Part shown: piece by piece, positions 2,229 to 40,438 of the stretch | How the letters are laid out: the number at the start of each line of letters is the position of its first letter | Position numbering within the stretch: position 1 is the first letter of the stretch | Assembly: GCF_963921235.1 (NCBI RefSeq) | Contig: NC_086112.1 | Span: 64,356,001 to 64,420,000 of the forward strand | Source of the DNA: Mobula hypostoma | Lineage: Eukaryota | Length of the DNA stretch: 64,000 nucleotides | Direction: 5' to 3' | Translations under genes and position numbers: made by a program | Notes under the pieces: generated by a model | The model's input: the letters and a program-made list of their open reading frames with translations, nothing else | Databases searched by the model: none | Told to the model about the DNA's origin: nothing

Positions 2229-3104
2229 CACTGATCTCCCTCCCGGCACTTATCCTTGTAAGCGAAACAAGTGCTACACATGCCCTTACACTTCCTCCCT
2301 CACTACCATTCAGGGGCCCAGAAAGTCCTTCCAGGTGAGGCGACACTTCACCTGTGAGTCGGCTGGGGTGATATACTGTGTCCGGTGCTCCCGATGTGGC
2401 CTTCTATATATTGGCGAGACCCGACACAGACTGGGAGACTGTTTCGCTGAACATCTACGCTCTGTCCGCCAGAGAAAGCAGGATCTCCCAGTGGTCACAC
2501 ATTTTAATTCCACATCCCATTCCCATTCTGATATGTCTATCCACAGCCTCCTCTACTGTAAAGATGAAACCACACTCAGGTTGGAGGAACAACACCTTAT
2601 ATTCTGCCTGGGTAGCCTCCAACCTGATGACATGAACATTGACTTCTCTAACTTCCATTAATGCCCCACCTCCCCCTCGTACCCCATCCGTTTTATATAT
2701 TATATATATATATATGTATTCATTCTCTCTCTTTCTCTCTCTCTCTCCTTTTTCTCCCTCTGTCCCTCTGACTATACCCCTTGCCCATCCTCTCGGTTCC
2801 TCCCCTCCTCCCCTTTTCCTTCTCCCTGGGCCTCCTGTGCCATGATCCTCTCATATCCCTTTTGCTAATCACCTGTCCAGCTCTCGGCTCCATCCCTCCC
2901 TCTCCTGTCTTCTCCTATCATTTTGGATCTCCCCCTCCCACTTTCAAATCTCTTACTAGCTCTTCTTTCAGTTAGTCCTGACGGAGGGTCTCGGCCCAAA
3001 ATGTCGACTGTATCTCTTCCCAGAGATGCTGCCTGGCCTGCTGTGTTCACCAGCAACTTTTATGTGTGTTGCTTGAAATTCCAGCATCTGCAGATTTCCT
3101 CGTG
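2229..3104 (+). mobile_element. 5'-truncated Penelope-like element (GIY-YIG endonuclease plus 3' repeat)
   Basis: PGTYPCKRNKCYTCP...GVIYCVRCSRCGLLYIGETRHRLGDCFAEHLRSV (VIY..YIG); flanked by TCTGCTCCC at 2220-2228 and 3105-3113; hammerhead motif at 2974-3009 is mutated. Confidence 0.9.
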
Positions 3105-3605
3105 TCTGCTCCCATCTCTTTTGTTTTTATGATAACGAGTGTTATAGGAAATCAACCAAAATTCGTCTCTAACTTGGACATTTTTCAGATTTCCTTCACG
3201 GACTATACTGGTGAAAACTTATATCCAACCAAACTGTTACTGGGAATTCTTGCCCAATTCCAAGATCACGAGGATTTTATGGGATTACATAATAATATTA
3301 CAGGCTGAAAACCACTCTTCACATTGAAAATTATTAAATGTTATTGCAGAAATAAAAATGTCACATAAACATTAGAGGAAACAATACATCTTAGAACCAA
3401 GAATTTTAGATTGGCAGTGTGACAACAGATACATTAAATTTCAAAATGAATGATACGTACAGCACTTTGATGTAGCAAGCATTTGCAAACAGTTCTGGTC
3501 ATGGAAATGAACAATTGATATTTAAAATAGACTTTGTTCAATGCATGGTAGTCAAAGGTATCATCTTTGATATTTAATATCTTTATAAATCTCCTGTCTG
3601 TCAAG

Positions 3606-3749
3606 TCTTTTGCAGAGATGCTGAAAGTTAACAAAACACTGAAGAGTTTGAACATTGAGTCCAACTTTATCACTGGTAATGGAATCCTGGCTCTAGTGAA
3701 AGCTCTCCAATACAATAAATCTTTGGTTGAACTTAAGATTGACAATCAG
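3606..3749 (+). CDS. TMOD1: Tropomodulin-1, third-to-last coding exon (LRR domain)
   Basis: AG at 3604-3605, GT at 3750; 144 nt encoding [48 protein letters not shown], matching the tropomodulin LRR region. Confidence 0.95.
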
Positions 3750-3889
3750 GTCAGACGTGTTCAGTTTTCCTTCAAAATGTGTTTAACTCATTTCAATTGT
3801 AAATTTTATATGGTTTGAAAATATGGTGTGAAGTTTTTTGTGGGTAAATCCCAAATTTAACAGTAGGCTATATTTAGCTTTTGGCCTGT

Positions 3890-4850
3890 ACAAGGGAAAT
3901 CGGTGTTATTTATTGCATGAGCTCTTTCATTCTGTCTACATCTCCTCGTATCCAGACATTTTAACTCTACTTCCCATTCCCACACCAACGTGTCTGTCCA
4001 TGGCCTCCTCCACTGCCAAGCTGAGGCCAAATGCACATTGGAGGGAGAGCACGTCATATTCCATCTTGATAGTCTCCATGTCACTTGGTTTGGCTATGGC
4101 CCAGGTGCGGAGTGAGAGACACTGAAGCAGGTTGATAGTTCACAGACTTTAATACGAACAGTGTTAAAGGGAAAAGAAAACAATAAATGCTAGGCCAAGC
4201 AGGGCCGTTAACTAAAACTCTCAAATGGAAAACGAAGCCTACACAGACAAGGTGGAATGCAAACAGGCTGCGAAGCGTTGCTGTGTCCAAGTCTCGACAA
4301 ATACTACGACGGAATGAATGGAGTTAAATACTGTCACAATGAAATAATAATTAGTTGACACATGCATATCCACGAGCGCAATTGCCACATCTGCAGTGTT
4401 GCCGAATCCGTGGTTGTGACATTCCAACTTGGATTTCTTTCAGTAGCTGCTCCCCTCTATTCCCTCCTTGGTTTTCCCTTATCCTACCCGCCCTGTCACC
4501 CATCTCTTACCTTTCCCCCTCCCCTTGACCTGAACCTCACCCACACATTCTTCCCTCTGGTTTTCTCCATACCTCTTTATTTTTATTCTTTCTCTAGTGT
4601 AGTCTCCTATCAGATTCCAGTTCTTTGGCTCCTTGTCACTTCCATCTATTACCTCCTGGTTTCTTACCTCATTCCCACTTTCCCATCCTTCACCTGCCTG
4701 TCATCCCCTATCACCTACCAGTTCTTGCTCCTCCCCCTCCCCCCACCTTTCTTTTCTGTCCCAATGAAGGGTCTCAAACAAAAACATCAACTATTTCCCT
4801 CCAAAAATGCTGCCTGACCTTTTGAGTTCCTGCAACATTTTGTGTGTTGC
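3890..4850 (+). mobile_element. Old degenerate Penelope-like element interrupted by a solo LTR
   Basis: Diverged homology to the GIY-YIG tail (cattttaactctacttcccattcccacacc..) and to the 3' repeat (gaagggtctc..tgctgcctgacct). Confidence 0.65.
4079..4421 (-). mobile_element. Solo LTR (Gypsy-like)
   Basis: TGTCAC...GTGACA terminal inverted repeat; near-TSD CTCCA/TTCCA; TATA-like and ATTAAA motifs on the minus strand. Confidence 0.7.
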
Positions 4851-4989
4851 AAAAGGAAGATAGGATTCTGTTAGCTACTGCTTGTTTAGCATGTTCGGTT
4901 AAAGTGCCTTGGGATATTTATTATGTTAGGGTTGTCTTGTAAATGCAGTTTACCAAAGTATATGATGCATCTCCTTCCTTTATTCATAG

Positions 4990-5134
4990 TGTCAGCAGCT
5001 GGGTAATAAAGTGGAAATGGAAATTGCAAACATGCTGGAACAAAATCGAGCGCTTCTGAAATTTGGCTATCATTTCACCCAGCAAGGCCCAAGGCTTCGA
5101 GCTTCTAATGCTGTGATGAACAACAATGACCTTG
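4990..5134 (+). CDS. TMOD1: Tropomodulin-1, penultimate coding exon
   Basis: catag acceptor, gtaaga donor; [48 protein letters not shown] with the hallmark [11 protein letters not shown]; ends in phase 1. Confidence 0.96.
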
Positions 5135-6563
5135 GTAAGATAACTTCCTTTGTCGCCACAATGTTCTACGATGTGTTCAGATATCACATTTAATTTTGGT
5201 TTTAATTAATTTTAGTATTCAGACTAATATAAAATACCAAGAAAACTTTATATTTGACATTTACAAGTTGCAGTATTGGAACAGCTATAACATCTAATGT
5301 AATGATATAATTGTTATGCACCAACATTTTTGTTTAATTTAATTGTGAAAAGTTCAAATACATTTTGCTATATTTAAGCTCTGGGCTCTCACGAAAAATT
5401 GCCTGATTGATATAGCAGTTCCAATTCTTTGTGCCTATTGTTTTTTTAACAAATAAAACTCCATTATTGTTAACATATGAATGCCATGTAATTTATATAA
5501 AAACTTCTTTAATATGTTTTCCCAGTCGTTGCGTTCAAAATTCCAGCTCTGGTTTCCTTCCTGTTGAGTTTCCACTTCCAAATGTGCTTTTACAGAAATC
5601 ACTGGGTAGAGAAGTTATGTCACGTTAGGGAGACAAAACTGAAATGCTCATTTCATGACACATTCTCATATTTCTATATAATTGCTAAGAAGTTGAACTT
5701 GTATTGAGCAGTACGTCTTCCAGCGTGTACTGAGAAACTGAGTTATGCATAGCATGGAAAACCTTTACAAAGAGCAAAAGACATTGGCACGTATGTAGCA
5801 ACCTGCACTTGAGGAGAGGAGAGAAGAGACTCAAACTAATTGGAAAAATTGAAGAAAAGTCCATGGTATAGATTTGTGAAAATGTTTATGGGCCTAAGGA
5901 GTGGAAGGAGGTGGGTGGTTTTCAAGAATTATTTTACTGAGTTCAATTCAGTTTGAGGTTGAAGTGAAAATTAACTTGCTCATCAGAGCTACAGCACCAG
6001 AGGTAATTACTATTTAAATGCTTACGACAATAAAACATCCACTAGTTACGTCATTATTGCGGTGGGTTCCACAACTCTGCTGCCTGGGACTATGTATGAC
6101 TCTTAGTACCTTCAATAAATTGGTTTAGTCAAAAATTTAGAACTGCATTAAATTCAAGATGCTAGTAAATTGAGTTAGTGGCAAAATATAATAAAGGCAA
6201 TTTAAGTCCACCATCCTTGAATGAAACAGAATCTGAAGTTACTGCTAATCTAATATATTAATGACTACCGTAAGAGGGATTTTCAAAAGTTGTGATAAAA
6301 CATTCTTAGTGAGTTTGAAGTAAAAACAGAAAATGCTGAGAATACTCAGCAGGACAGGCAGCATCTTCGGAGAGAGAAACAGAGTTAAGGTTTCAACTTG
6401 TGAAGTTTCACAGATGCTGCTTGACTTCTGACGATCCAGCTTTTTCGTTTTTTTATTTCAACTTTCCAATATCAGTGGATTTTATACATTAATGAATTTT
6501 CTTTTTAGAATCCCTGGTTGTCTTGTTTTGCAGGAGTTCTTAACAATCCAATTTTTGTTGCAG

Positions 6564-6628
6564 CTCGCATTAACAGAGCAGATGGTTCCTGGCCTAGATT
6601 CTCAGCTTTGGAGCTGGAGGAGATATAA
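6564..6628 (+). CDS. TMOD1: Candidate alternative terminal coding exon of TMOD1 (ARINRADGSWPRFSALELEEI*)
   Basis: Acceptor atttttgttgcag; in phase 1 gives 21 aa then TAA, the same 65-nt coding length as the canonical last exon; followed by about 1.3 kb of TE-poor, UTR-like sequence. Confidence 0.5.
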
Positions 6629-7974
6629 GTATATAGTATTTTTTGGTCATAGTCTCCCTTACTGAATTGGCAGTGCTTTACACTGCCTTTCTGCTGGACT
6701 ACACCAACTTCCCTTTCTCTGACTGCAGATTTATCCCCTTCCCCTTTCCTCCACTGCTTTTCCTGTTTTTCTTGCTACACAATTATACTTTATGATTAAT
6801 AATTCTGGATATCCTTTTTATATATAGATCTAAATTGCATTAACTAGCAAATCTATGTCTGCAGCAGTGAAATTTCTTCTGTTATAATACCTTTTTCTTA
6901 GCTGAGATTTAAAAAAAAAAATCTGTATATTGTCACTTCTTTAAAAGAACTGCAAAATGCCACTTGGAAGCAATTTTTCACATACAGCATGAGGCAGAGT
7001 CAAAGAATGTTGCAATAACCTCCATTTAGTAATAGCCATTTTAATTATAAGTCCTATCTCAAAGTTGTTCAGTGCTGTTTTTACTGAATCTCCGCTTTCC
7101 AAGGTGTGCATTATTTCACTTTGGGGCTAATTTCTGACTCTATGATTGACTGCCATTGGAAAGGGGTTTGAGCTCAGAATCTGATATTAGAGACAGTTCT
7201 GATCATTTGAATTGGGCTGCACGTGTCCCAGCGGCTAACATTCTTTCTGTCATCATGTTGTCATTGTGTACAAAGTTAATGTTGTGATATAGCTTTTCAA
7301 GCACAGAAATCAATACTTTACAAATTTTCAAACAGAAATTGGCAATTGCATTTTCAGCACTGAAAGATTATAACGACATTTTACCATCTATTTCATTATA
7401 TCTGAAGTAGTGTTCAGTTTTATTGGGATGTTTACATCGGCATGTTTGAAAAGAATTGATTTGCTATCACCACAGCCACTTTGCATGTGTGTCTACTCCT
7501 TATTACTTAGTAAGGCTAAGATCTAATAACTTTGCTTCACTTTCGATAATATTGCTAACATTTGGAATAGAGATACAGTGCATTCACTGGGGGATAAGAA
7601 CCCTACCTCTCAGCTTCTTGCCACAAATCCCCTAATCACCAAGCAACAGTAAACAATTTTGTGTGTTGTTGGACAAAGGATGAAGAACCAACAGAACAAA
7701 GTTAAAAGTGTACTATGCCACACAACGGAATATTGCCAAACAGACATTGCAGTAGAGAACGTTTTTGTAGTGCAAGAAAACACTTTGTATTTTACACAAA
7801 AAATGATTGACTAAATTAGTTTTCAACTGTAGATAAATTATAATAATTTTTCGATATTGACTTTTTTGGTGTTTCAAACCTAGTTGATGGAAGGTGTCAA
7901 TACTACACTGGGCCCAGGTGAAACTTTTTTGTGCAAACATGATTTTAAAAAAAACATTTATATTGTTTTATTAA

Positions 7975-8540
7975 TAGGGGTAGAGGTGTATAGGGTGAAG
8001 AAGTCATGCTGCAACTATAGTCAGACCACACTCACACTTGGAGTCTTGCATGCATATTCCAGTCACTCCATTATAGGAATGATGGAGAGGTAAAGAAGAG
8101 GTTTACTTGGATTCTGCCCAGATCAGAAGGTATGAGCTATTAAGAAAGGTTGTACAGGCTTAGGTTACTCTCCCTAAAATTCTGGGGGCTGGGGGAGAGA
8201 CCTGATGGGAGTTTATAAATTTATGAGAAGCATAGATTGAGTAGACAGTCAGAATCTTTTCCCAGGGTCAAGCACCTTTAAAGATTAGAGGGTGAAGTGA
8301 GGAGCAAGTTTTATTATGCAGAGAGTGGCAGGTGTCTGGGACTGGTTACATGGGTACTCGTGGAAACAGGCCCTTTGGTTGAGTCTAAGAAGTTTTTAGA
8401 TAGAAAGATGAACATGAAGGGAATGAAGGGATATGGATGATAAATGCGAGGAGGACATTCTGTATAAATTGGCATCAAGATCGGCTAAACGTCATGGGCA
8501 GAATGACCTATCTGGTGCTTTACTGTTCTGTGTTCTAATT
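7975..8540 (+). mobile_element. Degenerate CR1 LINE 3' end
   Basis: Remnants of MLQLY..RPHLEY and the CR1 3' UTR ending ctgttctgtgttcta. Confidence 0.7.
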
Positions 8541-9201
8541 TGGAGTTCGGTAACTAGCATCAAGTGGTTAAACACATTTTATAGACTAACGGTAGAACAG
8601 ATTCAAGTGTATGAGTCAGGTGCTGGTTCACCATGCCAACCATCTGGAATCTAATTTCAGTAAGGCCAAAATAGATGTAGTTTTAGTAAGAAAAGATGTA
8701 CAGAGAAAAAAAAGAGACCATAATTGGAGAGTGGCTTGTGTAGTGCATATTGAATCTTTTATAGAGAGAAAGAGAAGACAATGGGTGAGACTTAGTAACT
8801 GTAATTTCTGACCTAAGAGCAATTGGCAGTGATACCAGATGCAAAAATGTTGCACGGAATGCTTTGTACAGCTTTATATGCAGAACTGAACTTTAAGAAT
8901 AAAGATTAATTTATTTTGAGATAGATTTACAAAAGAAAATGCAAAATGAGTGAAAAAAATAGCGGTTTAAAAGTGGGATTTATATAGTCAGACAAGAAAT
9001 GAACATAATCAGAAGGCTGAAAGTGTTCTTGGTCACTTTTAAAGATTGCTTCAAAACTGACACTTCAGCATGCTGATAGTTTAAAAACCAGTGAACATTT
9101 GAACTAGGAAAATGAATTACTTAAGCCTTTTATGTCTGAACTTTAGAACACGAGAAACTCTTTTGCATATCTATGGTACAAATTTTGTTTCTTTTTGAAG
9201 A

Positions 9202-9848
9202 GATGACTCTGTGGTTAAGAAGGCATACGGTGCATTGGCCTTCATAAATTGTGGGATTGAGTTTAGGAGCCGAGAGGTAATGTTACAGCTATATAGGACC
9301 CTGGTCAGACCCCACTTGGAATACTGTGCTCAGTTCTGATTGACTCACTACAGGAAGGATGTGGAAGCCATAGAAAGGGTGTAGAGGAGATTTACAAAGG
9401 TGTTGCCTGGATTTGGAGGCATGCCTTATGAGAATAGGTTGAGTGAACTCAGCCTTTTCTCCTTGGAGAGACGGAGGATGAGACGGGACCTGATAGAGGT
9501 GTATAAGATGATGAGAGGCATTGATCGTGTGGATAGTCAGAGGTTTTTTTCCCAGGGCTGAAATGGCTAGCACAAGAGGGTACAGTTTTAAGGTGCTTGG
9601 AAGTAGGTACAGTGGAGATGTCAGGGGTAAGTTTTTTTACTCAGAGTGCTGAGTGTGTGGAATGGGCTGCCGGTGACAGTGGTGGAGGCAGATACGATAG
9701 GGTCCTTCAAGAGACTTCTGGATGGCTACATGGAGCTTAGAAGAATAGAAGGCTCTGTGTAACCCTGGGTAATTTCTAAGGTAAGGATATGTTTGGCACA
9801 GCTTTGTGGGCCAAAGGGACTGTATTGTACTGTAGGTTTTCTATGTTT
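9202..9848 (+). mobile_element. CR1 LINE 3' end
   Basis: KKAYGALAFI..EVMLQLYRTLVRPHLEYCAQF; same subfamily as 40439-41220; tail ttttctatgttt. Confidence 0.88.
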
Positions 9849-10424
9849 ATATGACAAACAATTGAGATTACATTCTTAAAAGCACTTTGAAACCTAATTT
9901 AAATGGTTACGAGAACAGACAGGATTAATTACTTTAGGGACACTGAGAGCAAAATCAGGTAGTTATGATTAACCAGTATAGAATGAAGTATTTTGTCCAG
10001 GTAGGAATGACATGATAGCCTTGAAGCAGAAGAGATTTCAAATCCTTGAATAATGCAGAAAATAAGTTATTTTACCATTGTCTGTCTGCCAGGTCTTTGA
10101 GGGAACTATCCATTAGCTCCTTTGCTTTACTCATTTTCTACAACCTTGCAAATTACTCCTTTGCAAATGCAGTAATGGAACATGTTCCATCATCCAATGC
10201 AATGCACACATTGTATTCTGGACCGTAACTTGCTGCATTAGGTATCGTTTTCTTCTTTTGTTCCAGTTGCTTTCCTGGAGAATATTAAATCTGTGACCTC
10301 TGACTGTAACCTTGTTTACTATATCTAAGATTTTTGAACATCTGTATTCATCTTTTTTTGCTATAAGGAATTTTCTCTAATAAAATCAAAATGCTGAAAA
10401 TACTCAGCTGGTTAAGCAGCACCT

Positions 10425-10735
10425 GTGGTGCCATGGTAGAGTAGTGGTTCACATGATGCTATTACAGCTCTGGGATTTCTGGAGTCTGGAGTTCAATTCT
10501 GGTGCTGTTCTGTAAGGAGTCTCCGTACGTCCTCCTCAAGGAATGTGTGAGTTTTCTCTCGGTCCTCTGGTTTCATCCCACAGTCCAAAGATGTATCGGG
10601 TGAGTTAATTGGTCATTGTAAATTGTCCTGTGATTAGGTTAGGGTTAATTAGGTTTGTCAGAAGCTGCTGGGACAGCATAACTCAAAGGGTTGAAATTGC
10701 CTACTCCGTCCTGTATCGCTAAATAAACAAACAAA
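10425..10735 (+). mobile_element. tRNA-derived V-SINE (HE1-like)
   Basis: B-box-like GAGTTCAATTC; V-domain-like ggtttcatcccacagtccaaagat; A-rich tail. Confidence 0.7.
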
Positions 10736-12112
10736 CTGATGCTGCAATGACCTTTCATCAAAGCTGGAAAAAGTTATAAAACAAGTATGTCTTAAGTTGC
10801 AGAAAATTGATATGCCTGGAAAGATTCAAGGGAATGTCTTTGATAAGGTGAGACTAAGAGAGACTGAGACATGTGGTGGTGCTAGCTGTGAGGGTGCCAA
10901 AGGCTTCTTAACAACAGCTCGATCAGTCTGAAGAAGGTTAAATGAAGTCAGATAAATAAATTCTGAGGAAACAAAAAAAAACAATGTTGAAACTGTCAGA
11001 CACATCACAGCTAATAGAGTTCTTAAATAAAAGGGAATGTTAAAAATACCCAGTAGGTTAGGCAGCAGAGGCTGACAACTTCTCATCAAAACTGGGCAGT
11101 TTTTTTTCCACAAACTAGAAGCACTAGTTACTAAGATTATTGCCTTCTTAAAGATGAGATGCTACTCCTCAAGGTGACATTGGACTTCACTGGAACAGTA
11201 TCATATGCCAAAAGTTGGAGTGGAGAATTAAAGTAACAGACAACTGGAAGGGCAGGGTAATCCTCACCTAGGGTCAATCAGACACTTATTCACCGTCTAG
11301 TAGCCGCAAAAATTAAGTCACACATTATCTTGCTCCCTGCCCCCCATGTGTTCAGTTACATTCGAGTAGATTAGAATATCATTGCCAAATCCTGCCCTGT
11401 ATTTTCCCTTTGGATTCCTCGGTAAACTGGGCTACATAATCCCCCTCTCCCCAACCACTAGACTGATTTTTCTTACGTTGTGTACTGGCAGCATTTTTAA
11501 GCAGTACATCTGTACTTATTTGTCTACACTTCCTCCTTTTACTAAAATGATGCCTGTATTTAGATTGGTTATATGGAGGGATTAGAACAGCCGAGATTGT
11601 TCTTACAAACCAGAAGTTGAGGAGAGATGAAATAGAAGAGTTTTGATTGATGCTAATGACAATATGATCCATTGATGAGGGGAATAGTAACCACAGAACA
11701 TACCCTATAAAACTCTGCCTCAGCAGAGGGACATGGAAAATAGTAACATATTGCTTAGGGTGGCCTGAATTTACAGAGCGTTTAATAGTGTTAAATAGAT
11801 TAGAATAGAGAAAAATGGTTCAAAAACATGGGCTCTATCTTTCTGAATGCAGAAAGCATTTCTAACAAGATGGACGAATCAACTGCGGGAATAGGGATTA
11901 TTGGTACAAACTAACAGCCAGCATTGAACAAGTTTGCAAAATGGTCAATTTTAGGATAATTGGAATATTTCAGGAGAGGCGTAATGGGAAAGGAGGTGAG
12001 AAACTCTGATAATAAAGGAATGTATTAGGACATTAGCTCTGAAAGTTAGGAAGTAGAATTGTTCATACCAGATTAAAAAGAAAATTCACAGAAAAGGAAT
12101 AGATGGTGAAAG

Positions 12113-12422
12113 TAGACAATAGACGACAGACAATAGACAATAGGTGCAGGAGTAGGCTATTCGGCCCTTCGAGCCAGCACCGCCATTCACTGTGATCATG
12201 GCTGATCATCCACAATCAGTATCCAGTTCCTGCCTTATCCCCATAACCTTTGATTCCGCTACCTTTAAGAGCTCTATCCATCTCTTTTTTGAAAGCATCC
12301 AGAGACTTGGCCTCCACAGCCTTCTGGGGCAGAGCATTCCATATATCTACCACTCTCTGGGTGAAAAAGTTTTTCCTCAACTCCGTTCTAAATAGCCTAC
12401 CCCTAATTCTTAAACTGTGGCC
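12113..12422 (-). mobile_element. CR1 LINE 3' end with short-repeat tail
   Basis: GHSLRIRGRLFRTELRKNFFTQRVVDIWNALPQKAVEA; (agacaat)n tail on the + strand. Confidence 0.85.
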
Positions 12423-13636
12423 CAAAGTAGTCCCAAGACCCCTGAAAAATTGATATAGTATTGATCAAAAAATAAAGAGGACTTGTAACAAGGGGGGGGG
12501 GGGTGGAGTCTACAGAGAACTGTAAACCAGTTTTATTTTCTCTTGTAATTCCAAAAGCTATTTGATTAGGTATCATATAAGAAGTTATTCCACAATTAGC
12601 ATGTTAGTTAAGAGATAAGAGCTGTAATAAATGGATCATTTCAGATAAGCAAACTGTAACAAATGAAGCATCAGAGAGTTCATTGCCTGGACCTCAACTA
12701 TTTATATTAATGACTTAATTGAAGGAACCAAGTGTACTGAGCCAAATTTGCTGTCAGTAAAAATATATGCGGCAAGTTAAATTGTGAAGGGGGCACAAAA
12801 TGTCTGTAAAGAAGTACTAATAAGTTTTGAGTGGTCAAACAGAAGACGGCTGGAGTATAATACACTCCGTGTGGTGCAATCCACCACTCGGACCACTAAA
12901 CGTTGGTCCATATAGACCGGGAGGGATGGGTGTCAAGTGTTGGGAGAGGTTGGATCACCCTGGGCTGATTTGGAGGAGTTGAGAACAGATTAAACACCTA
13001 CGCAGATAGACTGGGGGTTTCTCTCCCTGCAACGCTAAGGCTGTGAGACCGCCCTGGCTGCCGTGCTTCATGTCTGCGAACTTTGTGGCAATTTGCCCTG
13101 CCAATATGATGAACTGAATACTGAGGCTTTGGGCCCACTCAGGGGATTTAGATCCAAGGACTCAATTTGGATCGAAAAGCTGTTGTTGCTCGCTTCTGTT
13201 GTTTGCATGATTTGTTTTGTTTTCGTCTTTTTCTGTGTGCATCGGTGTTGGTCTTTTATTTTAAATTGGGTTCTTTCAGGTTCCTTGTTTTATGACTACC
13301 TATAATTTAAAAGGTTGTATAATTTATCCATTCTTTGATAATAAACATACTTTGAATATAGGGAGAGCTATGGTTATCTAACAAAGAATTTAACTGGTTT
13401 TAGATTAATGAGTGCTAGTGTTTTTCATGTGTGACAAATGGTTCTGATAATAGGTACTTTAAGTAATTAAGCAAATAGGATATTGAGCTTTATTGCAATA
13501 AAGATGAAGTACCAAGATCAGGAAGTTTTACTAAAATTACACTAGGCTTCGGTGAGACAATAGTGTACCCTGTAGTATTATTTAAGATTCATGTTTCCAT
13601 ACATCAGGAACCACTGAAACCATTGAGTCCATACCT

Positions 13637-15611
13637 TGTTGCAAGGACAAGGTGGTGGAACGAACCCAAGTGCTGAACACGGGCACGGAGGCCTAGTTGG
13701 GAGGCATTACGGTCATAGCGAGCGTGGAATTGGTGTTCAAGAGAGTCTTTACCCGGAGTCTTGGTTTTAGTAGAGAATTCAGGAACGATGCTAGACTTAG
13801 AACTGATAGTCCTAAGAACCAGGGACCGAGGTTACTCATACACAAGTCGACCAGCAAACTGGCAGCTCCTTTTGTCTGTCTGTCTGTATCTTGTTTTATG
13901 GCGGTTGGCATCCAGCTTAATGGTGCATTACCACCACCCTCTGCTCCGGAATGTGCACTAGACATACATTCTAAATCCCTTCACCCAATCTCACACACAC
14001 ACACACACAAACCTACACTTTACCCTCCCATCTTTGACCATCCTAGTACCCTATTCCTGTTTATCCGTCATATCCTATAAAAAACCCCTGTACCCCTTAA
14101 AAACACTAAAAATACCCGGACTCGTGCTCTCTCACCCATGCCCAGCAACCCTTTTAATGTGAATTCCTGCGCCCCCAACTCCCTTAATTTAATTCTCATC
14201 ATCTCTCTCTGTATCCCATACTTCCTGCAACACAAAACTACATGTTCTACTGACTCCTCTTCCTGACATTCCTCAAACAATCCTGTCTGATGTTTCCCTA
14301 TCATTTTCAATGGTTTGTTTAATGCACAATGCCCCAGCCTTAACCTAGTCCACACAGTTTCCTCTCTTCTGTTTCCATTACCTACCCTGGTACCTGCAAC
14401 ACTCTTTTGTATTTGATATAAATGCCTCCCTTTCCCCTCCCTGTCCCATCTTTCTTGCCACATTTGGTTGACTTTTTCCCAGATTACACATTTAACCTCT
14501 GCTTTACTGATACTAATGTGCATTTCCACATTTTCTTTCTTTAACGCCCTCTTTGCCAACTCATCCACCCTCTCATTCCCCTTCACCCCTACATGTGCTG
14601 GAACCCATAGAAATTTTACCTGACCTCCCTGATTTGCAATTCTTGTAACTAACTGAAGGACTTCATAAAGTACATCTTGCAGACTGTTTGTGTGAAAAGA
14701 CCTTAAACTTGCTAGAACTGAGGATGAATCTGAACATATCAATGCTTTGACTTGTCTGGCTTTCTGCACCCATTGCAACGGAACCAACACCGCCAGCATC
14801 TCCACTGTAAACACCCCTAACTTATTAGATGTTCTTCTGCTGATTCCAATTTCTTTTGGTGGTATAACCACCCCAAACCCTGTCACTCCTGTTTCAGGTT
14901 CCTTTGCACCATATGTATAAATGTGAGTATAATCACTATACTTTTCCATCACATGACAATTAAATGCATTTACCAAATCTGTCTTATATCTTTCTTTCCT
15001 CTTTACCTCTAACAAATGCCAGTCTATGTCAGGCCATACAAGCTTCCATGGAGCTACAACCGGATAAACTACTGAAGGACTTATCCTCAGATCAAACACT
15101 CCACATTCTTTCGCGATATCATTCCCTACCCGACTAAAGGTATCCCTCTGAAACCTCCCATTTTCCCAGCACTCCTGCAACACTCCTTTAGCAGGGTGAG
15201 AAATATTGTGCCCCTGCAAGTTAGCCCAGTAGTTTGCCATCAGTTGCATCCTTCTTAGTTCCGAAGGCATTATTCCCATTTCTTCATGTAGGGCTGACAC
15301 TGGTGATGTTTTAAAAGCCCCACTGCACACTCTCAAGGCCTGAGCCTGAATCACATCCAGTTTCCTTATAAGAGACCTAGCTGCTGATCTATATACTATA
15401 TTTCCATAGTCCAACACAGATCTCACTAAAGCCACATACATTCTCTTCAAAGCTGAACAACTTGCTCCCCTGGCAGCTCCTTGTTGTGATAACAGGGTCT
15501 TTGTCCTGCAGTTTCTGGAACCTGGGAATGATTGGAAATTAAATGAGGTGATTGAGGCCCAAATGCTGAGATAAATGGCAAGGTGGGGGATTGCCAGAAG
15601 GGACCATGACA
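13637..15611 (-). mobile_element. Solo LTR (Gypsy-like, 364 bp once the nested LINE is removed)
   Basis: TG...CA ends (minus strand starts TGTCATGGTCC); perfect 5-bp TSD TACCT at 13632-13636 and 15612-15616. Confidence 0.75.
13872..15469 (-). mobile_element. 5'-truncated I/Nimb-type LINE with RT C-terminus, RNase H and zinc-knuckle remnant
   Basis: MYVALVRSVLDYG, ICSDSSS, KFLWVPAHVGVKGNERVDELAK, TRLRLGH, ECQEEESVEHVVLCC; (CAGA)n tail; 13-bp TSD CTGGCAGCTCCTT at 13859-13871 and 15470-15482. Confidence 0.9.
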
Positions 15612-16483
15612 TACCTATTCTCAGAGTATTTGCATATCTCCACTAACTTTGCTGTAACCTATTTTTTTTTCACACATCAATTTACGACTGTTTCCATATC
15701 CCTAATGTAAGATGGTGGTAGAAATTTACCATGACTAAGTAACAAACATTTCATCTTCAGTGGGAGGAAACCAGAATACCAGTCAGAGGGAGAATATGCA
15801 AACTTCACACAGACAGCACCAGAGACTGGAATCAGGCATAGCTTGCTGGAACTATGAACAGCAATATTAATTGCAGCACCATGATATTGGCCACGTCATT
15901 GCCTTATTTGGGGAAGGATGTACAAGACATAATGCAGCAAATGTAAGTTAGAGAGATTGTATAATGAGCAAAGGTTGCTTAGTCTTTTAATCTGGACTTC
16001 AGAAGAAGGTAGAAGATAAATTGTTCTCTTGGAAACTCAGGTTTGTGAAGGAGCCAATTGTATTATCAAAAGGACAATTCTCACCAATGCAGGAAGATTC
16101 CACAACCATGTTCCTGATTTTCTTTAATCAAATAATTCATGAACATAGGTTCAGGAACTACTTACTATTATGTTTAGGCAAAAAGTACTTTGAGTTAGTA
16201 GAAGAGTTGTACTGGAAAGCTGATGTTTAAGAGCATGAGGTGGAGAAGTGTTAGTTGAGAAAATAGTGCAAGACCGAGTTTTAAAATTGAAGAAAATAAA
16301 GAAGTGATATAATTAGTACATCTCCCTATAATGCTACACATCTGTTAACGAAGACTACAGTATATAATACAGTAAAGTTTAAAAACTGTCTAAATTAAAG
16401 GTAATGCAAGTCAAATACCTCTCATTTTTGCGATCCAGTTTTCTATCAAAAATTAACTGTGTTGGGTTGTTGATCTATTTTAG

Positions 16484-16548
16484 TGAGGAAAAGTCGACTT
16501 CTGGGCATCGATGGCCCCATCATCCCCAGGAACCGAACAACAGTCTAA
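16484..16548 (+). CDS. TMOD1: Tropomodulin-1, canonical last coding exon (VRKSRLLGIDGPIIPRNRTTV*)
   Basis: ctattttag acceptor, phase 1; matches the TMOD1-specific C-terminal tail (recalled human VRKRRLADLTGPIIPKCRSGV); stop TAA at 16546-16548. Confidence 0.93.
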
Positions 16549-16773: not shown

Positions 16774-18149
16774 TCATCAATTCTAAATCCATTCATTAGT
16801 TGATGAATATATCCCTGAATGGATTGTTGAGTGAAACTATAGCTATATGGTGCATGAAAGAACCTGCTGTTATGACATTTACTGCAGAAGCATAAGTACT
16901 CATTTTATTTATATTATTTGATGCCAGAAAATTACCTCGAGTAAGCTGTTCTTTTCTTGGAGGAAATCATTCTTCATTTTGTGACAAAAGTACTGCTTGA
17001 GAATTGTGTGTATCAGCTTCGTGTTTACTGATTTACAGAACTTTCATGTAATCCAGAATTTCCACTGATTTGTTACTTACTACACAAAAGATGCCAAATA
17101 GTTTTGAGTTTCAATCAAAATACTTAAGTCTGTTTAAAATTATGGAAATTTATATAAACAGTTGTTTATTGCTTGAGTTATCATTGACAACCTCCAAATA
17201 CCCTTCACTTTACTGCATATGTCCTTGCCTTGCATCAATTATGGAGCAGGCAGTAAAATTACAATTATTTATATATTTGGCTATATTTCCATTATTTCCT
17301 GAAACAAAGTATTTTTAACAATCCAAAATAACTTTATTTTAAATATGCAGTATCTGTTCTAAAGCTTTTCAATGACAAAAAGATGTCAAATTATATTCTT
17401 TTAATGAATTGACACCCAATGCCACCTCGACAGCTTGCATCACTGAGCTGTATACCTCCTTCACCTTCACGGTCGTTATGATGTGTGATCATCTTTTGCC
17501 AACTCCATGATTGACATCTTGGTTGGATCACTTTGTCTGGAACCTCCCCTTTGAGCTTACTGCCATGAGTGACTCCACCAGCTCGCAAGCCTCTTCACCA
17601 CCGCAGGTGACAATCCTCAGAGAAGAGGATCTGCCTGGTACTTCTGTAGCACCAGTGTCTTATGCCACTTCTCGGCCCATGACTGAACGTAGTTCAAATT
17701 TTGCTGAAGACTGTTGCATTGGCTATAGAGCTGTGAACAGAACTGAACATTGTGCAGACACCAGCAACTGTTCCCACTTTGGACCTCATGGTGGATGGAG
17801 GGTCACTGATGTAAGTGGTTGGGCCCAAGACACTGCCCTGAGCACCTCCTGCAGACATCTCCCAGGATCTCCAACACCTTCCTCCGTGTGAGGGTAGATT
17901 CTGATCACTGGCGTGGTTTCCCCTTGATATCCATTCACTTTACCACAGCTTCTTGATGCCAAATTAAGTCAAACACTGACTTAATGTTAAGAGAAGTCAC
18001 TCTCACCTCTCCTTTAGAAATCAGCATTTTAACCTATGTTTTGAGTGATTTAATGAGCAGGTCAATGGAGAAGCAAACTGCTGGAGGAATTCAATAGGGT
18101 GGGCAGCCTCTGTGGAAGGAAGGGGAAAGCTGCAACAGAGCATCAGGAC

Positions 18150-35289: not shown

Positions 35290-36710
35290 AGCCGACTGGC
35301 AGAAGGCAAAGAGTGGGAATAAAGGGGGCCTTTTCTGATTGGCTACTGGAGACTAGTGGTGTTCTGAAAAGGTCTGTGTTGGGTCCCCTACTTTTCCTGA
35401 CATATATGTTAATGACCTGGATGATGGAATAGATGGCTTTGTGGCAAAGTTTGCAGAAGATAAGTGAAAGGACAGGTAGTGTTGAGGAAGCAGAAGCATT
35501 TGGACAGATAAGGAGAATGGCAAAGAAGCTGCAGATGGAAAACAGTGTAGGAAAGTGTATGGCCATGTACTTAGGAAGAAGGAATAAAGGTGTACACTAT
35601 TTTCTAAATGGGGAGCGAATTCAGAGATCAGTGAAAAGGACTTGGGAGTCCAACAACAGAATTCCCTATATGTTAAGTTGGTATCAAGGAATGCAAATGT
35701 AATGGTGGCATTCATTTCGAGGACCAGAGTATAAAAACAAGAATGTAATGTTGCAGCTTTAAGGCATTGGTTAGACCATATTTGGAGTACTGTGAGCAGT
35801 TTTGGGTCCCACGTCCAAGGAAGAATACGCTGGCATCAGAGAGGGTCCAGAGGTTTACAATTATCCCAGGAATGAAAGGGTTAACATACGAGGAACATTT
35901 GATGGCTTTGGGCCTGTATTCACTGGAGTTCAGAAGAATGAGGGAAAATATCGAATATTGAAAGGCATAAATAGAGTGGATGTGGAGAGGGCCTAGGACC
36001 AGAGGGCACAGCATCAGAATACAAGGATGTCCTTCAGAACAGAGATGAGGACGAATTTCTTTAGCCAGACGTTGGTGATTCTGTGGAATTATTTGTTACA
36101 GATGGATGTGGAGGCCAAGTCATTGGGTATTTTTAAAGCAGAGATTGATATGTTTTTGATTAGTAAGGGCATAGAAGGTTATGGGGAGAAGCAGGAGAAT
36201 GTGCTTGAGACCAAAAATAAATCAGCAATGATCAAACGGTAGAGCAGACTTGATGGGCCAAATGTCGATTTCTGCTCCTATGGATCAGCGTTAGAGCTAT
36301 GGCTTATCTGATCTAATAACTTTGATTTGGGTGCAAGACCATTTCTAACTTTGAAGATGACACAAAACTTAGCAGTACTGTGAACAATGAAGAGAATAGG
36401 GATAAATTGCAGTGAGATAAAAAGTGAGGAACAGGCAACTATGCTGCAAATGAAGTTCAATGTGGAGAAATGCATGCCAATGTATTCTGGCAGAAAAGAT
36501 GCTGTTCTGATAATGATGCAGAAGTTGAGGGATGACGTATGTGTGCAGAAGTGACTGCAAGTGACAAGGCAGCTGAGAAAGTGCTTAATAAGGCATACAC
36601 AATTGTGAACTTCAATAAAGGTAGAGAGCATTAAAGCAGGGAAGTTGTGTTGAATCTTTATAAAACAATGCTTCGGACTCAGCTGATGTTTTCTGAGTTC
36701 AATGAAGTAC
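35290..36710 (+). mobile_element. Degenerate CR1 LINE pieces (RT C-terminus and 3' end)
   Basis: AKFAED, VRPYLEYCEQFW, GMKGLTYEEHLMALGLYSLEFRRMR, FRTEMRTNFFSQ. Confidence 0.8.
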
Positions 36711-36811
36711 ATGAGTAGATTTCTTACAAATATAATTTTAACCACAGTAACAGAACTTTGTTATATTTACACTTATTATTTAATATGGCAGAAAACCAGT
36801 TTTTCCTTTAC

Positions 36812-36934
36812 CTTAAAGTCCTCAATGGACATACTTTGAAAGAGTGGATGGGAAAGCATAGTCTGAATATACAGCTCAGTTGCCATTTTGCATCCACCGA
36901 CTGTTCCATTAATTCCTTCTTTAGAGACGCGCAC
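36812..36934 (-). CDS. TSTD2: TSTD2 coding exon 4
   Basis: VRVSKEGINGTVGGCKMATELYIQTMLSHPLFQSMSIEDFK with the EGINGT motif of the YceA/TrhO-like N-terminal domain; 123 nt. Confidence 0.95.
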
Positions 36935-37375
36935 CTGAAAGAAAAGTTGCTAGTTGAAAAACTCATTTGATACTCAGTGTAAACTATCAATCAACCATGT
37001 CCTAATTTGCCCAAATTTATAGTGAAACTACTGATGCACTTCCACTACCAGAAATCTGCTAACAAAGTGTGTTTCTGTACCATTTTGTTTTTATGTATCA
37101 GTTAATAAGATAACATCTGTGGAGAGAAGAATTAATCCTTTGATTGTCAGTGCCAGTCTTAACAATGTCTCATTTTCCGAGATTTTAGGCTGACATTTTA
37201 GTATTGTCAGAATTACCACCTTTCAGGATCACCTGTTCAAATAGACACCACTCTTAATTCATGCTCCTCCTGAGACATAAACACAAGGAATTCTGCAGAG
37301 CTGGAAATTCAAGCAACACACATCAAAGTTGCTGGTGAACACAGCAGGCCAGGCAGCATCTCTAGGAAGAGGTAC

Positions 37376-37411
37376 AGTCGACGTTTCGGGCCGAGACCCT
37401 TCGTCAGGACT
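37376..37411 (-). ncRNA. Minimal type I hammerhead ribozyme motif (intact core, sense to TSTD2)
   Basis: Minus strand AGTC-CTGACGA-AGGGTCTCGGCCC-GAAA-C-GTC-GACT. Confidence 0.75.
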
Positions 37412-37610
37412 AACTGAAAGAAGAGCTAGTAAGAGATTTGAAAGTGGGAGGGGGAGGGGGAGATCCAAAATGATAGGAGAAGACAGGAGGGGGAGGGATG
37501 GAGCCAAGAGCTGGACAGGTGATTGGCAAAAGGGATATGAGAGGATCATGGGACAGGAGGTCCAGGGAGAAGGAAAAGGGGGAGGGCAGAAAAAACCCAG
37601 AGGATGGGCA

Positions 37611-37940
37611 NNNNNNNNNNNNNNNNNNNNNNNNNNNNNNNNNNNNNNNNNNNNNNNNNNNNNNNNNNNNNNNNNNNNNNNNNNNNNNNNNNNNNNNNNN
37701 NNNNNNNNNNNNNNNNNNNNNNNNNNNNNNNNNNNNNNNNNNNNNNNNNNNNNNNNNNNNNNNNNNNNNNNNNNNNNNNNNNNNNNNNNNNNNNNNNNNN
37801 NNNNNNNNNNNNNNNNNNNNNNNNNNNNNNNNNNNNNNNNNNNNNNNNNNNNNNNNNNNNNNNNNNNNNNNNNNNNNNNNNNNNNNNNNNNNNNNNNNNN
37901 NNNNNNNNNNNNNNNNNNNNNNNNNNNNNNNNNNNNNNNN
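37611..37940. other. Assembly gap (330 N)
   Basis: Run of N inside the Penelope 3' repeat. Confidence 1.
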
Positions 37941-39836
37941 TAAATAAATAACAGATGGGGTACGAGGGGGAGGTGGAGCATTAGCGGAAGTTTGAGAAGT
38001 CAATGTTCATGCCATCAGGTTGGAGGCTACCCAGACGGAATATAAGGTGTTGTTCCTCCAACCTGAGTGTGGCTTCATCTTTACAGTAGAGGAGGCCGTG
38101 GATAGACATGTCAGAATGGGAATGGGATGTGGAATTAAAATATGTGGCCACTGGGAGATCCTGCTTTCTCTGGCGGACAGAGCGTAGATGTTCAGCAAAG
38201 TGGCCTCCCAGTCTGCGTCGGGTCTCGCCAATATATAAAAGGCCACATCGGGAGCGCCGGACGCAGTATATCACCCCAGTCGACTCACAGGTGAAGTGTT
38301 GCCTCACCTGGAAGGACTGTTTGGGGCCCTGAATGGTGGTAAGGGAGGAAGTGTAAGGCCATGTGTAGCACTTGTTCCGCTTACAAGGATAAGTGCCAGG
38401 AGGGAGATCAGTGGGGAGGGATGGGGAAGACGAATGGACAAGGGAGTCGCGTAGGGAGCGATTCCTGCGGAAAGCGGGATGGGGGGGGAGGGAAAGATGT
38501 ACTTAGTGGTGGGATCCCATTGGAGGTAGTGGAAGTTACGGAGGTTAATATGTTGGACCCAGAGGCTGGTGGGGTGGTAGGTGAGGACAAGAGGAACCCT
38601 ATTCCTAGTGGGATGGCAGGAGGATGGAGTGAGAGCAGATGTGCGTGAAATGGGGGAGATACGTTTGAGAGCAGAGTTGATGGTGGAGGAAGGGAAGCCC
38701 CTTTCTTTAATATGTCTATCCATGGCTTCCTCTACTGTAAAGATGAAGCCACACTCAGGTTGGAGGAACAACACCTTATATTCTGTCTGGGTAGCCTCCA
38801 ACCTGATGGCATGAACATTGACTTCTCAAACTTCCGCTAATGCCCCACCACCCCCTCGTACTCCATCCATTATTTATTTATATACACACATTCTTTCTCC
38901 TTCTCTCTTTTTTCTCCCTCTGTCCCTCTGACTATACCCCTTGCCCATCCTCTGGGTTTTTTCTGCCCTCCCCCTTTTCCTTCTCCCTGGACCTCCTGTC
39001 CCATGATCCTCTCATATCCCTTTTGCCAATCAACTGTCCAGCTCTTGGCTCCATCCCTCCCCCTCCTGTCTTCTCCTATCATTTTGGATCTCTCCCCCCA
39101 CCCCACTTTCAAATCTCTTACTAGCTCTTCCTTCAGTTAGTCCCGATGAAGGGTCTTGGTCCGAAACGTCGACTGTACCTCTTCCTAGAGATGCTGCCTG
39201 GCCTGCTGCGTTCACCAGCAACTTTAATGTGTGTTGCTCCTCCTGAGACACGCATGTTACATAAATTATTTATAACCAACTAATTTAGAATACCTTTAAA
39301 GGCTTTTCCTGGTTTACAACATTTACAAAATTGAAAATAAACTCAATTACAATTTTTTTGTTACTAAATGTTGCAATTAGGGAACGTTTTTCAATTCACT
39401 TTCTGTAACACAACATAACAAGAAGAGTTATAAAAGAAAATACCTTTATCACACTTAAGACAGAAACACGAAGCATAAATAGTTAATCAGAATTATCTTC
39501 CATTGAGTTGCTTAACTGCATTGGCAGGAGACAGCATCACAATGTTGTTAACACTGCTATAAAGCATATAATCAAACAATGAAGTGCTGTTATTTTAACT
39601 GTCTGTTGAATCTTACTAAGACTAGGCAGCAAGAGGATGAGATTTGCCTCTTAAATTATTAGCAAGATCCTGGTTGATTTTTTTACCACAGCATCACTAT
39701 CAGAACTTTTCTATATATTACGTTCAAATATTTTAGCTTTCTCAAAAGAAAATTAAAGGACAGCATCTCATCATTTGATTGGACATAGAACAAATGTTAT
39801 GGCAGTCCTTATAATCCGGTTAGAAACAGAAACATA

Positions 39837-40436: not shown

Positions 40437-40438
40437 TA

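What the first reader, a model, noticed from the sequence alone, without database searches (positions are those of the whole stretch)
6534..6628. Candidate alternative terminal exon of TMOD1, equal in length to the canonical tail
Seen: 1.4 kb into the 11.3-kb last intron, the acceptor atttttgttgcag at 6563 read in the required phase 1 gives ARINRADGSWPRFSALELEEI*. That is exactly 21 aa / 65 nt, like the canonical VRKSRLLGIDGPIIPRNRTTV*, and shares the xRxxRxxG pattern (R2, R5, G8). A second acceptor 30 nt upstream (6533) is in the same frame and would add GVLNNPIFVA. About 1.3 kb of TE-poor, UTR-like sequence follows, unlike the TE-packed remainder of the intron. Established: the tropomodulin C-terminal helix contributes to actin pointed-end capping. 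Inference: mutually exclusive last exons could swap a basic tail for an acidic one (ELEEI). I did not find a canonical AATAAA downstream.
Basis: partly seen in the sequence, partly recalled or inferred. Interest (0 to 1): 0.7.

Follow-up and report, generated by a model that had tools for sequence, protein, structure and literature searches.

The report
Conserved alternative tail exon of tropomodulin-1
The predicted exon is real: it gives the actin-capping protein tropomodulin-1 a second, acidic 21-residue tail, but it is an ancient exon shared by sharks, fishes, frogs and reptiles and is already present in public gene models, so it is a rediscovery whose function nobody seems to have tested.

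Summary
Transcript contigs from two RNA-like public runs, from two closely related organisms, join 5134 to 6564 at GT..AG borders. This gives ...NNNDL-ARINRADGSWPRFSALELEEI*, as predicted.

The same contigs continue from 6628 into the canonical last exon (16484...). In these transcripts it is therefore a 65-nt cassette exon whose last three bases are the stop codon, and the canonical last exon becomes 3'UTR. Other contigs read through the donor from 6599 to beyond 8500, while the intron upstream has no cover, so a terminal or retained form is also possible. The upstream acceptor at 6533 has no support.

The tail is ancient and already in public gene models:
- 21/21 identical in Hypanus sabinus and Heptranchias perlo TMOD1.
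- 20/21 in whale shark and white shark, 16/21 in elephant fish.
- Recognisable (ARi.R.dg.Whn.Sal.Ledv) in frogs, caecilians, turtles, crocodile, lizards, bichirs and sturgeon, and longer in teleosts.
- The Xenopus exon is also 65 nt, 46/65 identical.

No paper in the held library describes it. It is real, conserved, annotated and functionally unstudied. It replaces residues 339-359, which include the 15 residues whose removal disrupts actin-binding site 2.

The parts
3606..3749 (+). TMOD1 coding exon ([48 protein letters not shown]), third from last in the canonical mRNA
   Evidence: Translation. Contigs of X1 and X2 lie on 3606-3747 and join on to 4988 at GT..AG.
4990..5134 (+). Penultimate canonical coding exon ([48 protein letters not shown] plus the first base of the next codon); donor GT at 5135-5136
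   Evidence: Together with exon 3606-3749 it is 96/96 identical to Mobula hypostoma tropomodulin-1 X2.
6551..6563 (+). Acceptor atttttgttgcag that is used
   Evidence: Joint 5133->6563 (GT..AG, cut +1) in one contig each of X1 and X2. The acceptor ttgt(t)(t/a)(g)cag is kept in Xenopus and whale.
6564..6628 (+). 65-nt alternative exon. It encodes ARINRADGSWPRFSALELEEI, and its last three bases are the stop TAA (6626-6628)
   Evidence: The tail is 21/21 identical in Hypanus sabinus and Heptranchias perlo models. The Xenopus laevis exon is also 65 nt and 46/65 identical without gaps.
6629..6634 (+). Donor gtatat, weak by consensus (A at -1, no G at +5), used to splice to 16484
   Evidence: Loose end at 6628 in X1 and X2 reads TGAGGAAAAGTCGACTTCTGGGCATCGATG, which is window 16484-16513. 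TATAA|GTATA is identical in ray and Xenopus; the whale has TCTAA|GTATA.
6629..9239 (+). Stretch transcribed by read-through of the donor: either an extended or terminal form of the exon, or slow removal of the second half of the intron
   Evidence: A 2641-nt contig of X2 starts at 6599 and covers the stretch to 8500 and beyond (depth 45.7). Low-depth contigs of X1 and X3 lie on 6622-8491. Positions 5170-6004 have zero depth in X1 and X3 and at most 0.53 in X2, while the DNA-like run X9 covers them. The end near 9239 is computed from the contig length. AATAAA is at 8898.
6667..6706 (+). Intronic block after the exon that is alike in ray, frog and whale (TGGCAGTGCT..ACTGCC..TGG.CT..ACA)
   Evidence: It forms a hairpin in the ray only. 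Its function is unknown.
16484..16548 (+). Coding part of the canonical last exon (VRKSRLLGIDGPIIPRNRTTV, stop at 16546-16548). It is 3'UTR when the cassette is included, and its first three bases TGA then give a second stop

Best explanation
Window 6564-6628 is a genuine alternative coding exon of tropomodulin-1, conserved across jawed vertebrates. The window's TMOD1 exons match Mobula hypostoma exactly.

Shown:
- When the exon is included, the reading frame ends in it. The last 21 residues, VRKSRLLGIDGPIIPRNRTTV (net charge +4), are replaced by ARINRADGSWPRFSALELEEI (net charge -1).
- In the assembled transcripts the exon is internal. It is spliced on to the canonical last exon, which becomes 3'UTR.

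Inferred from the established 50-55-nt rule:
- Because the stop is the last codon of the exon, it lies directly at the final exon junction. The mRNA should therefore escape nonsense-mediated decay and be translated.
- Strong conservation of the peptide shows selection on the protein.

Shown but unresolved:
- Part of the RNA also reads through the weak donor. This gives the same protein with a different 3' end, or it is slowly spliced precursor.

Inferred function:
- Both tails keep the two arginines that match human Tmod1 R340 and R343, the end of the actin-contacting helix of actin-binding site 2.
- The alternative tail replaces the segment 345-359, whose removal disrupts that site.
- The isoform is therefore expected to cap or nucleate actin differently, most likely with weaker tropomyosin-independent binding through site 2, or to bind another partner through its conserved W..SAL.LE motif.
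For: RNA evidence:
- X1 (contig of 1331 nt) and X2 (1822 nt), from two organisms and two studies, carry joints 3747->4988 and 5133->6563, both GT..AG.
- At 6628 they continue with the first 30 nt of the canonical last exon.
- The intron upstream (5170-6004) has depth 0 in X1 and X3 and at most 0.53 in X2, but about 11 in the DNA-like run X9.

Conservation:
- 29 fetched proteins end in a 21-aa AR..R tail (24 distinct), consensus ARi.R.dg.Whn.Sal.Ledv.
- Identity to the window's tail is 21/21 in Hypanus and Heptranchias, 20/21 in Rhincodon and Carcharodon/Cetorhinus, 16/21 in Callorhinchus and 12/21 in Xenopus.
- Among cartilaginous fishes it is better kept than the canonical tail, which is 15/21 in sharks and 14/21 in Callorhinchus.

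Gene structure:
- The exon lies in the same place in Xenopus laevis (L002: 17446-17510, between 16997 and 20333).
- The same holds in a grenadier (L001: 3126-3236, between 2593 and 4005).
- Ray and Xenopus exons are both 65 nt and 46/65 identical, with synonymous changes in conserved codons.

Function of the replaced segment:
- PMC4571291 states that Tmod1 residues contacting actin run up to Arg-343.
- PMC6190845 states that removing 15 C-terminal residues (Tmod1 1-344) disrupts actin-binding site 2, and that the role of A345-V359 is an open question.
- R at tail positions 2 and 5 is invariant in both isoform alignments.
Against: - No raw reads were laid, only contigs. The share of transcripts with the exon, the tissue, the strand and the 3' ends are therefore unknown, and the runs' RNA status is the tool's guess (one is even labelled 'probably DNA', although it holds spliced contigs).
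- The exon-skipping canonical junction could not be looked for, because 16484 lay outside the 5-kb stretch laid.
- There is no protein-level evidence for the isoform.
- The functional reading is inference only. The AlphaFold2 model of the Hypanus isoform has pLDDT near 30 over residues 321-361 and says nothing about the tail.
- In birds the models carry broken versions, and in a whale the peptide frame is lost. The tail is therefore dispensable in some lineages.
Confidence: 0.9

Rival explanations
1. It is a true alternative terminal exon. The transcript ends by polyadenylation inside the intron after 6628, mutually exclusive with the canonical last exon.
For: - Contigs read through the donor: X2 from 6599 to about 9240 (depth 45.7, against 181 for the spliced contig), and X1 and X3 at low depth. 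The intron before the exon has no cover.
- The donor is weak.
- RefSeq models of tetrapods ending ..LEDV fit an unspliced end.
Against: - The best-supported contigs in both runs splice 6628->16484.
- There is no AATAAA or ATTAAA before 8898, and the X2 contig runs past that site.
- A-runs at 6911, 7947 and 8706 could prime oligo-dT on precursor RNA.
- No 3' end was observed.
- It may coexist with the cassette form rather than replace it.
Confidence: 0.3
2. It is a non-productive 'poison' exon. A 65-nt, frame-breaking insert with a stop lowers TMOD1 output through nonsense-mediated decay, and the peptide is irrelevant.
For: - The exon length is not a multiple of three and it carries an in-frame stop.
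- Conserved flanking intron sequence is typical of regulated exons.
Against: - The stop is the last codon of the exon, 0 nt from the final junction, inside the zone that does not trigger decay (established 50-55-nt rule).
- The contig holding the exon is the assembled path at depth 347 and 181.
- The peptide is conserved at the amino-acid level with synonymous DNA changes: 21/21 between a ray and a cow shark, and W, S and LE kept from sharks to lizards.
Confidence: 0.05
3. It is a chance open frame behind a chance AG, and the contigs are assembly chimeras.
For: By sequence alone the site is unremarkable: 46 stronger candidate acceptors lie in the intron, 20 of them with 21 or more open codons.
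Against: - The same joints, with GT..AG borders, occur in two runs of two organisms and two studies.
- The same exon, phase and tail occur in gene models of dozens of species and in the genomic DNA of Xenopus and a grenadier.
Confidence: 0.01

Closest known systems
RefSeq tropomodulin-1 isoforms of cartilaginous fishes with the ARINRADGSW..ELEEI tail. Examples: Hypanus sabinus XP_059826010.1, Heptranchias perlo X2 XP_067839423.1, Rhincodon typus X1 XP_020383995.1, Carcharodon carcharias X2 XP_041042688.1, Callorhinchus milii X2 XP_042192500.1.
   Same: Same gene, same splice phase, same 21-aa tail (16 to 21 of 21 identical) and same total length of 361 aa as the canonical isoform.
   Different: Nothing essential; the window's exon is the orthologue. 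The alternative-tail isoform of the window's own species was not among the 15 cluster members listed, so I did not see it directly. Mobula hypostoma 'X2' is the canonical form, which implies that another isoform exists.
Tetrapod tropomodulin-1 isoforms ending ARMHRTDGPWHNFSALDLED(V): Xenopus laevis X1, X2 and X3, X. tropicalis, caecilians, turtles, Crocodylus porosus X4, lizards and geckos.
   Same: - The exon lies in the same intron.
- It is 65 nt in Xenopus, 46/65 identical to the ray.
- TATAA|GTATA at its end is kept.
- Residues A1, R2, R5, W10, S14, L18 and mostly D7, G8, L16, E19 are kept.
   Different: Xenopus has a second GT 6 nt upstream (GAT|GTATAA). This explains 358-aa models that end ..LED and take their stop from the TGA at the start of the last exon. 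The ray has ATA there and can only use the GT after its TAA.
Teleost tropomodulin-1 'isoform X1' tails: ARVVRSDSDGSFTLTLSVPELERAFGKKFKSKT(K / NKKEKA / KRRLEGGPIFPKCRTNV). About 60 clusters, from Arapaima and Megalops to Perca.
   Same: Same intron and phase, with the same AR..R...DGS...ELE landmarks. In a grenadier the exon lies between the penultimate and canonical last exons.
   Different: The teleost exon is longer and lysine-rich. It is used in at least four ways, including in-frame insertion ahead of the canonical tail. It does not end with a stop at the splice donor.
Engineered truncation Tmod1(1-344), the 'A2' mutant of actin-binding site 2.
   Same: It changes the same region. The natural alternative tail replaces 339-359, which contains the 15 residues removed in the mutant (PMC6190845).
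   Different: The mutant deletes the tail, whereas the natural isoform substitutes a conserved acidic sequence and keeps the R340 and R343 equivalents. Whether it behaves like the mutant is untested.

Membership tests
Conserved alternative C-terminal exon of vertebrate TMOD1 (as in public gene models) | Lies in the last intron, between the ..NNNDL exon and the VRK.RL.. exon | tested here: met
   Window 5134 | 6564-6628 | 16484. The same order is found in Xenopus L002 and grenadier L001.
Conserved alternative C-terminal exon of vertebrate TMOD1 (as in public gene models) | Phase-1 acceptor giving a tail that fits ARi.R.dg.Whn.Sal.Ledv, 21 aa long | tested here: met
   ARINRADGSWPRFSALELEEI is 21/21 identical to Hypanus and Heptranchias and 12/21 to Xenopus.
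Conserved alternative C-terminal exon of vertebrate TMOD1 (as in public gene models) | Used in mRNA (spliced junction into the exon) | tested here: met
   Joint 5133->6563 at GT..AG in contigs of X1 and X2.
Alternative terminal exon by intronic polyadenylation | Transcripts end in the exon: own poly(A) signal and cleavage site, no onward splicing | tested here: inconclusive
   Onward splicing 6628->16484 is seen in both runs. Read-through contigs exist, but no 3' end was seen. The first AATAAA is at 8898, and the X2 contig passes it.
Poison exon (nonsense-mediated decay switch) | Premature stop more than about 50-55 nt upstream of the last exon-exon junction | tested here: not met
   The TAA is at 6626-6628, the last three bases of the exon and 0 nt from the junction to 16484.
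Tropomodulin family (PF03250 Tropomodulin + PF27087 LRR_TMOD-LMOD), paralogue TMOD1 | The window's exons match TMOD1 orthologues rather than TMOD2-4 or leiomodins | tested here: met
   The two exons are 96/96 identical, and the canonical tail 21/21 identical, to 'tropomodulin-1 isoform X2 [Mobula hypostoma]'. All named best hits are tropomodulin-1.

The most novel reading that the evidence does not exclude
The exon is a tail switch of tropomodulin-1 that dates back to the common ancestor of jawed vertebrates (my estimate from general knowledge: more than 400 million years). It tunes actin-binding site 2. The acidic W..SAL.LE tail would make a natural 'site-2-modified' capper, or recruit a partner of its own, in particular tissues. 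It has escaped study because human, mouse and chicken lack an intact copy. A whale still keeps its splice sites and a conserved flanking block, so mammals may retain the exon for another use.
Probability: 0.4. Interest if true: 0.55.

Novelty: already known. Interest (0 to 1): 0.33.

Why it matters
As a discovery it adds little, because the isoform is already in RefSeq for many sharks, rays, frogs, reptiles and fishes.

Its value is as a pointer. The 15 C-terminal residues of Tmod1 are needed for actin-binding site 2, yet they do not touch actin in the crystal structure. The field calls this an open question (PMC6190845). Most non-mammalian vertebrates carry a conserved natural replacement of exactly this segment, and it is present in Xenopus and in cyprinid fishes. 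Comparing the two natural isoforms in capping and nucleation assays would test what the tail does.

I found no paper in the held library that mentions the isoform.

Tried and rejected
- **Chance statistics.** The site cannot be told from chance by sequence alone, so I did not rely on motif strength.
- **Upstream acceptor 6533 (adds GVLNNPIFVA).** No contig joint and no homologue carries it, and the sequence before the acceptor is not conserved with Xenopus. Rejected.
- **AlphaFold2 of the Hypanus alternative isoform with a 32-row alignment.** Mean pLDDT was 58, and residues 321-361 were near 30, so it gives no information on the tail. I ran no further search on the canonical form.
- **Hairpin GGCAGUG/CACUGCC at 6669-6687.** It is stable in the ray (z -3.3) but not kept as a structure in Xenopus or whale. 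Only the primary sequence is conserved.
- **The look-up of encoding contigs.** It gave no DNA for the goby (withheld), for Hypanus (file too large) or for Callorhinchus (not on record). No second cartilaginous-fish locus could therefore be aligned at the DNA level.
- **tblastn of the tails on the whale locus.** It gave only a weak hit (SAQELEDI). The DNA alignment then showed the remnant.
- **Five literature searches.** None found a description of the isoform.
- **Not attempted.** Complex prediction with actin (no eukaryotic reference is offered and no binding claim is made), and the second sequencing-run search (without another read-laying run it could not show junctions).

Full report
**What is in the sequence**

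The window holds the last three canonical coding exons of a tropomodulin gene on the + strand: 3606-3749, 4990-5134 and 16484-16548. The first two exons are 96/96 identical, and the canonical tail 21/21 identical, to 'tropomodulin-1 isoform X2 [Mobula hypostoma]'. The gene is therefore TMOD1 of that ray or a very near relative.

The last intron is 5135-16483. At 1429 nt into it, the acceptor atttttgttgcag ends at 6563. Read in phase 1, 6564-6628 gives ARINRADGSWPRFSALELEEI followed by TAA at 6626-6628. The next two bases are GT.

By sequence alone it is not special. The intron has 46 AGs behind a stronger pyrimidine tract, and 20 of them open 21 or more codons in phase 1.

**RNA evidence**

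Twelve public runs were listed for 6400-7990, ten of which hold at least part of it. I laid the contigs of four runs on 3500-8500.

- **Runs.** X1 and X3 belong to organism A and show no differences from the window. X2 belongs to organism B, about 1.8% different, from another study. X9 behaves as genomic DNA and covers the whole stretch.
- **Internal control.** X1 and X3 do not cover the intron 5170-6004 at all, and X2 has at most depth 0.53 there. This shows that they behave as RNA.
- **Spliced contigs.** One long contig in X1 (1331 nt, depth 347) and one in X2 (1822 nt, depth 181) carry the canonical joint 3747->4988. They also carry the joint 5133->6563, which skips 1429 nt with GT..AG ends.
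- **Onward splicing.** The transcript does not end in the exon. At 6628 both runs continue with TGAGGAAAAGTCGACTTCTGGGCATCGATG, which is window 16484-16513, the start of the canonical last exon.

In these mRNAs 6564-6628 is therefore a 65-nt cassette exon. Its last codon is the stop, the first codon of the next exon is then TGA, and the canonical last exon serves as 3'UTR. Because the stop sits at the final exon junction, the established 50-55-nt rule predicts no nonsense-mediated decay. This is an inference.

**Read-through**

A 2641-nt contig of X2 (depth 45.7) starts at 6599. That is the first 31-mer that crosses the donor. It runs through 6629 to beyond 8500, and by its length it ends near 9240, where a repeat begins. 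X1 and X3 have low-depth contigs on 6622-8491.

With no cover upstream of the exon, this asymmetry means that some RNA keeps the sequence after the weak donor (TAA|gtatat). Two explanations remain:
- It is a slowly removed second intron.

I could not decide between them. No 3' end was seen. The first AATAAA is at 8898, and the contig passes it. Genomic A-runs at 6911, 7947 and 8706 could prime oligo-dT. Either way the protein is the same.

The exon-skipping junction 5134->16484 lay outside the stretch, so the ratio of the two isoforms is unknown. Contigs do not give it in any case.

**Conservation**

A search of protein cluster representatives with the penultimate exon turned up teleost TMOD1 models with a non-canonical tail, ARVVRSESDGS.T.TLSVPELE.AF.KKF... 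In a grenadier contig that tail is encoded between the penultimate exon and the canonical last exon.

Two further searches gave the full picture. The table lists the tails found.

| Group | Tail |
|---|---|
| Hypanus sabinus, Heptranchias perlo | ARINRADGSWPRFSALELEEI (21/21) |
| Rhincodon, Carcharodon/Cetorhinus | ARINRADGSWSRFSALELEEI |
| Hemiscyllium | ..SRYSALELEEI |
| Callorhinchus | ARISRADGSWPNYSALELQQI |
| Xenopus and other frogs | ARMHRTDGPWHNFSALDLEDV |
| Caecilians | ARVQRCDGPWHNISALQLEDV |
| Turtles | ARIRRSDGLWHNFSALQLDHV |
| Crocodylus | ARLHRSDGLWHNFSALHLEDV |
| Lizards and geckos | ARIHRCDGLWHNTSASELEDV |
| Bichirs and sturgeons | Same start, then a longer end |

Most of these are RefSeq 'isoform X1/X2' models.

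- Of the proteins fetched, 29 end in a 21-aa AR..R tail, with consensus ARi.R.dg.Whn.Sal.Ledv.
- Within cartilaginous fishes the alternative tail is better kept than the canonical one: 19-21/21 against 15/21 in sharks, and 16 against 14 in Callorhinchus.
- The Xenopus laevis exon (L002:17446-17510) is also exactly 65 nt and 46/65 identical to the ray without a gap. It shows synonymous changes in conserved codons and the same TATAA|GTATA end.
- A second GT 6 nt upstream in Xenopus explains the 358-aa '..LED' models. Their stop is the TGA at the start of the last exon, so the cassette usage seen in the ray is modelled there too.
- In birds only broken versions appear in models.
- In a gray whale the intron keeps a 57-nt remnant with both splice sites, but 8 nt are missing, so the peptide frame is lost.
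- No mammalian protein with the tail was among the hits listed.

**What it probably does**

Human Tmod1 numbering puts the swap at V339-V359.
- PMC4571291 says the actin contacts of actin-binding site 2 run up to Arg-343.
- PMC6190845 says that removing the last 15 residues (Tmod1 1-344) disrupts site 2. It adds that A345-V359 do not touch actin in the structure, and calls this an open question.

Both natural tails keep arginine at tail positions 2 and 5, which correspond to R340 and R343. These are invariant in alignments A3 and A4. After them the tails diverge completely: the basic, proline-rich ..GPI.P.CR..V against the acidic ..DG.W..SAL.LEDV. Net charge in the ray is +4 against -1.

My reading, which is inference, is a natural modulation of site 2. 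The helix end that touches actin is kept, and the segment needed for full site-2 activity is exchanged. That segment could also be a docking motif for something else. An AlphaFold2 model gave no usable confidence in this region.

**Novelty**

The exon, its tail and its cassette or terminal usage are in public gene models for many species, so the finding is a rediscovery. An earlier follow-up in this scan reached the same kind of verdict for a microexon of another tropomodulin gene of this genome.

Five searches of the held literature found no description or functional test of the isoform. That absence covers that library only.

**Verdict**

The alternative C-terminus is real. In the transcripts seen it is a cassette exon rather than a mutually exclusive terminal exon, and the terminal form is unresolved.
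- The exon is already known at the level of annotation.
- Interest is modest. It rests on the fact that a conserved natural variant of a functionally puzzling segment is available for experiment.

Noticed in passing
L003:42011-42067 (Eschrichtius robustus TMOD1, last intron 36194-42847): A 57-nt remnant of the same exon. The acceptor ttgttgcag and the end TCTAA|gtataga are kept, and 8 nt are missing in the middle. The conserved peptide frame is therefore lost: the phase-1 read is ARKHPSEVCLLSSGTGRHL, and it would run in frame into the last exon. The whale gene model P0020 uses a different, unrelated exon at 36388-36510.
   Followed up: partly
window 6667-6706; L002 about 17566-17605; L003 about 42118-42150: An intronic block about 40 nt after the donor is alike in ray, frog and whale (TGGCAGTGCT..ACTGCC(A/T)..TGG.CT..ACA). 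It may be a splicing control element. It forms a 7-bp hairpin in the ray only.
   Followed up: partly
L002:17446-17510 and 20333 (Xenopus laevis): Two donors 6 nt apart (GAT|GTATAA|GTATAG) account for the paired 358-aa (..LED, stop borrowed from the TGA of the last exon) and 359-aa (..LEDV) RefSeq isoforms. The same pairs occur in Pelodiscus, Microcaecilia, Rhinophrynus and Hymenochirus.
   Followed up: partly
Proteins P0151-P0212 (teleost tropomodulin-1): Teleosts use the homologous, longer exon in at least four ways: a stop after ..KSKTK; an extra mini-exon NKKEKA; an in-frame insertion ahead of (K)RKRRLEGGPIFPKCRTNV; and a short in-frame form ..ELERAF|VRKKRL.. in Alosa.
   Followed up: no
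window 6321-6505 and 8176-8500: These stretches have a very high summed contig depth in the DNA-like run X9 (about 1,000-2,900 against about 6-11 for the flanks), so they are repeat fragments. One ends about 60 nt before the exon's acceptor region. The exon itself is single-copy (depth 6.3).
   Followed up: no
window 3900-4860 and 1-540 / 2540-3110: Repeat copies sharing the ...cagatgctgcctg(g/a)cct... 3' region fill the introns upstream. The scan's note s1-142978 (hammerhead in a Penelope 3' repeat at 392-427) concerns these. I did not examine them.
   Followed up: no
Proteins P0313, P0314, P0315 (Apteryx, Sylvia, Pogona): Models in two birds and one lizard carry truncated or frame-changed versions of the tail: ARIHRCDGVWQ*, ACIHWSDGLWQKYLSSTSGQCIM+RKRRL.., and ARLRRCDGL*. 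This suggests decay of the exon in some amniote lineages.
   Followed up: no
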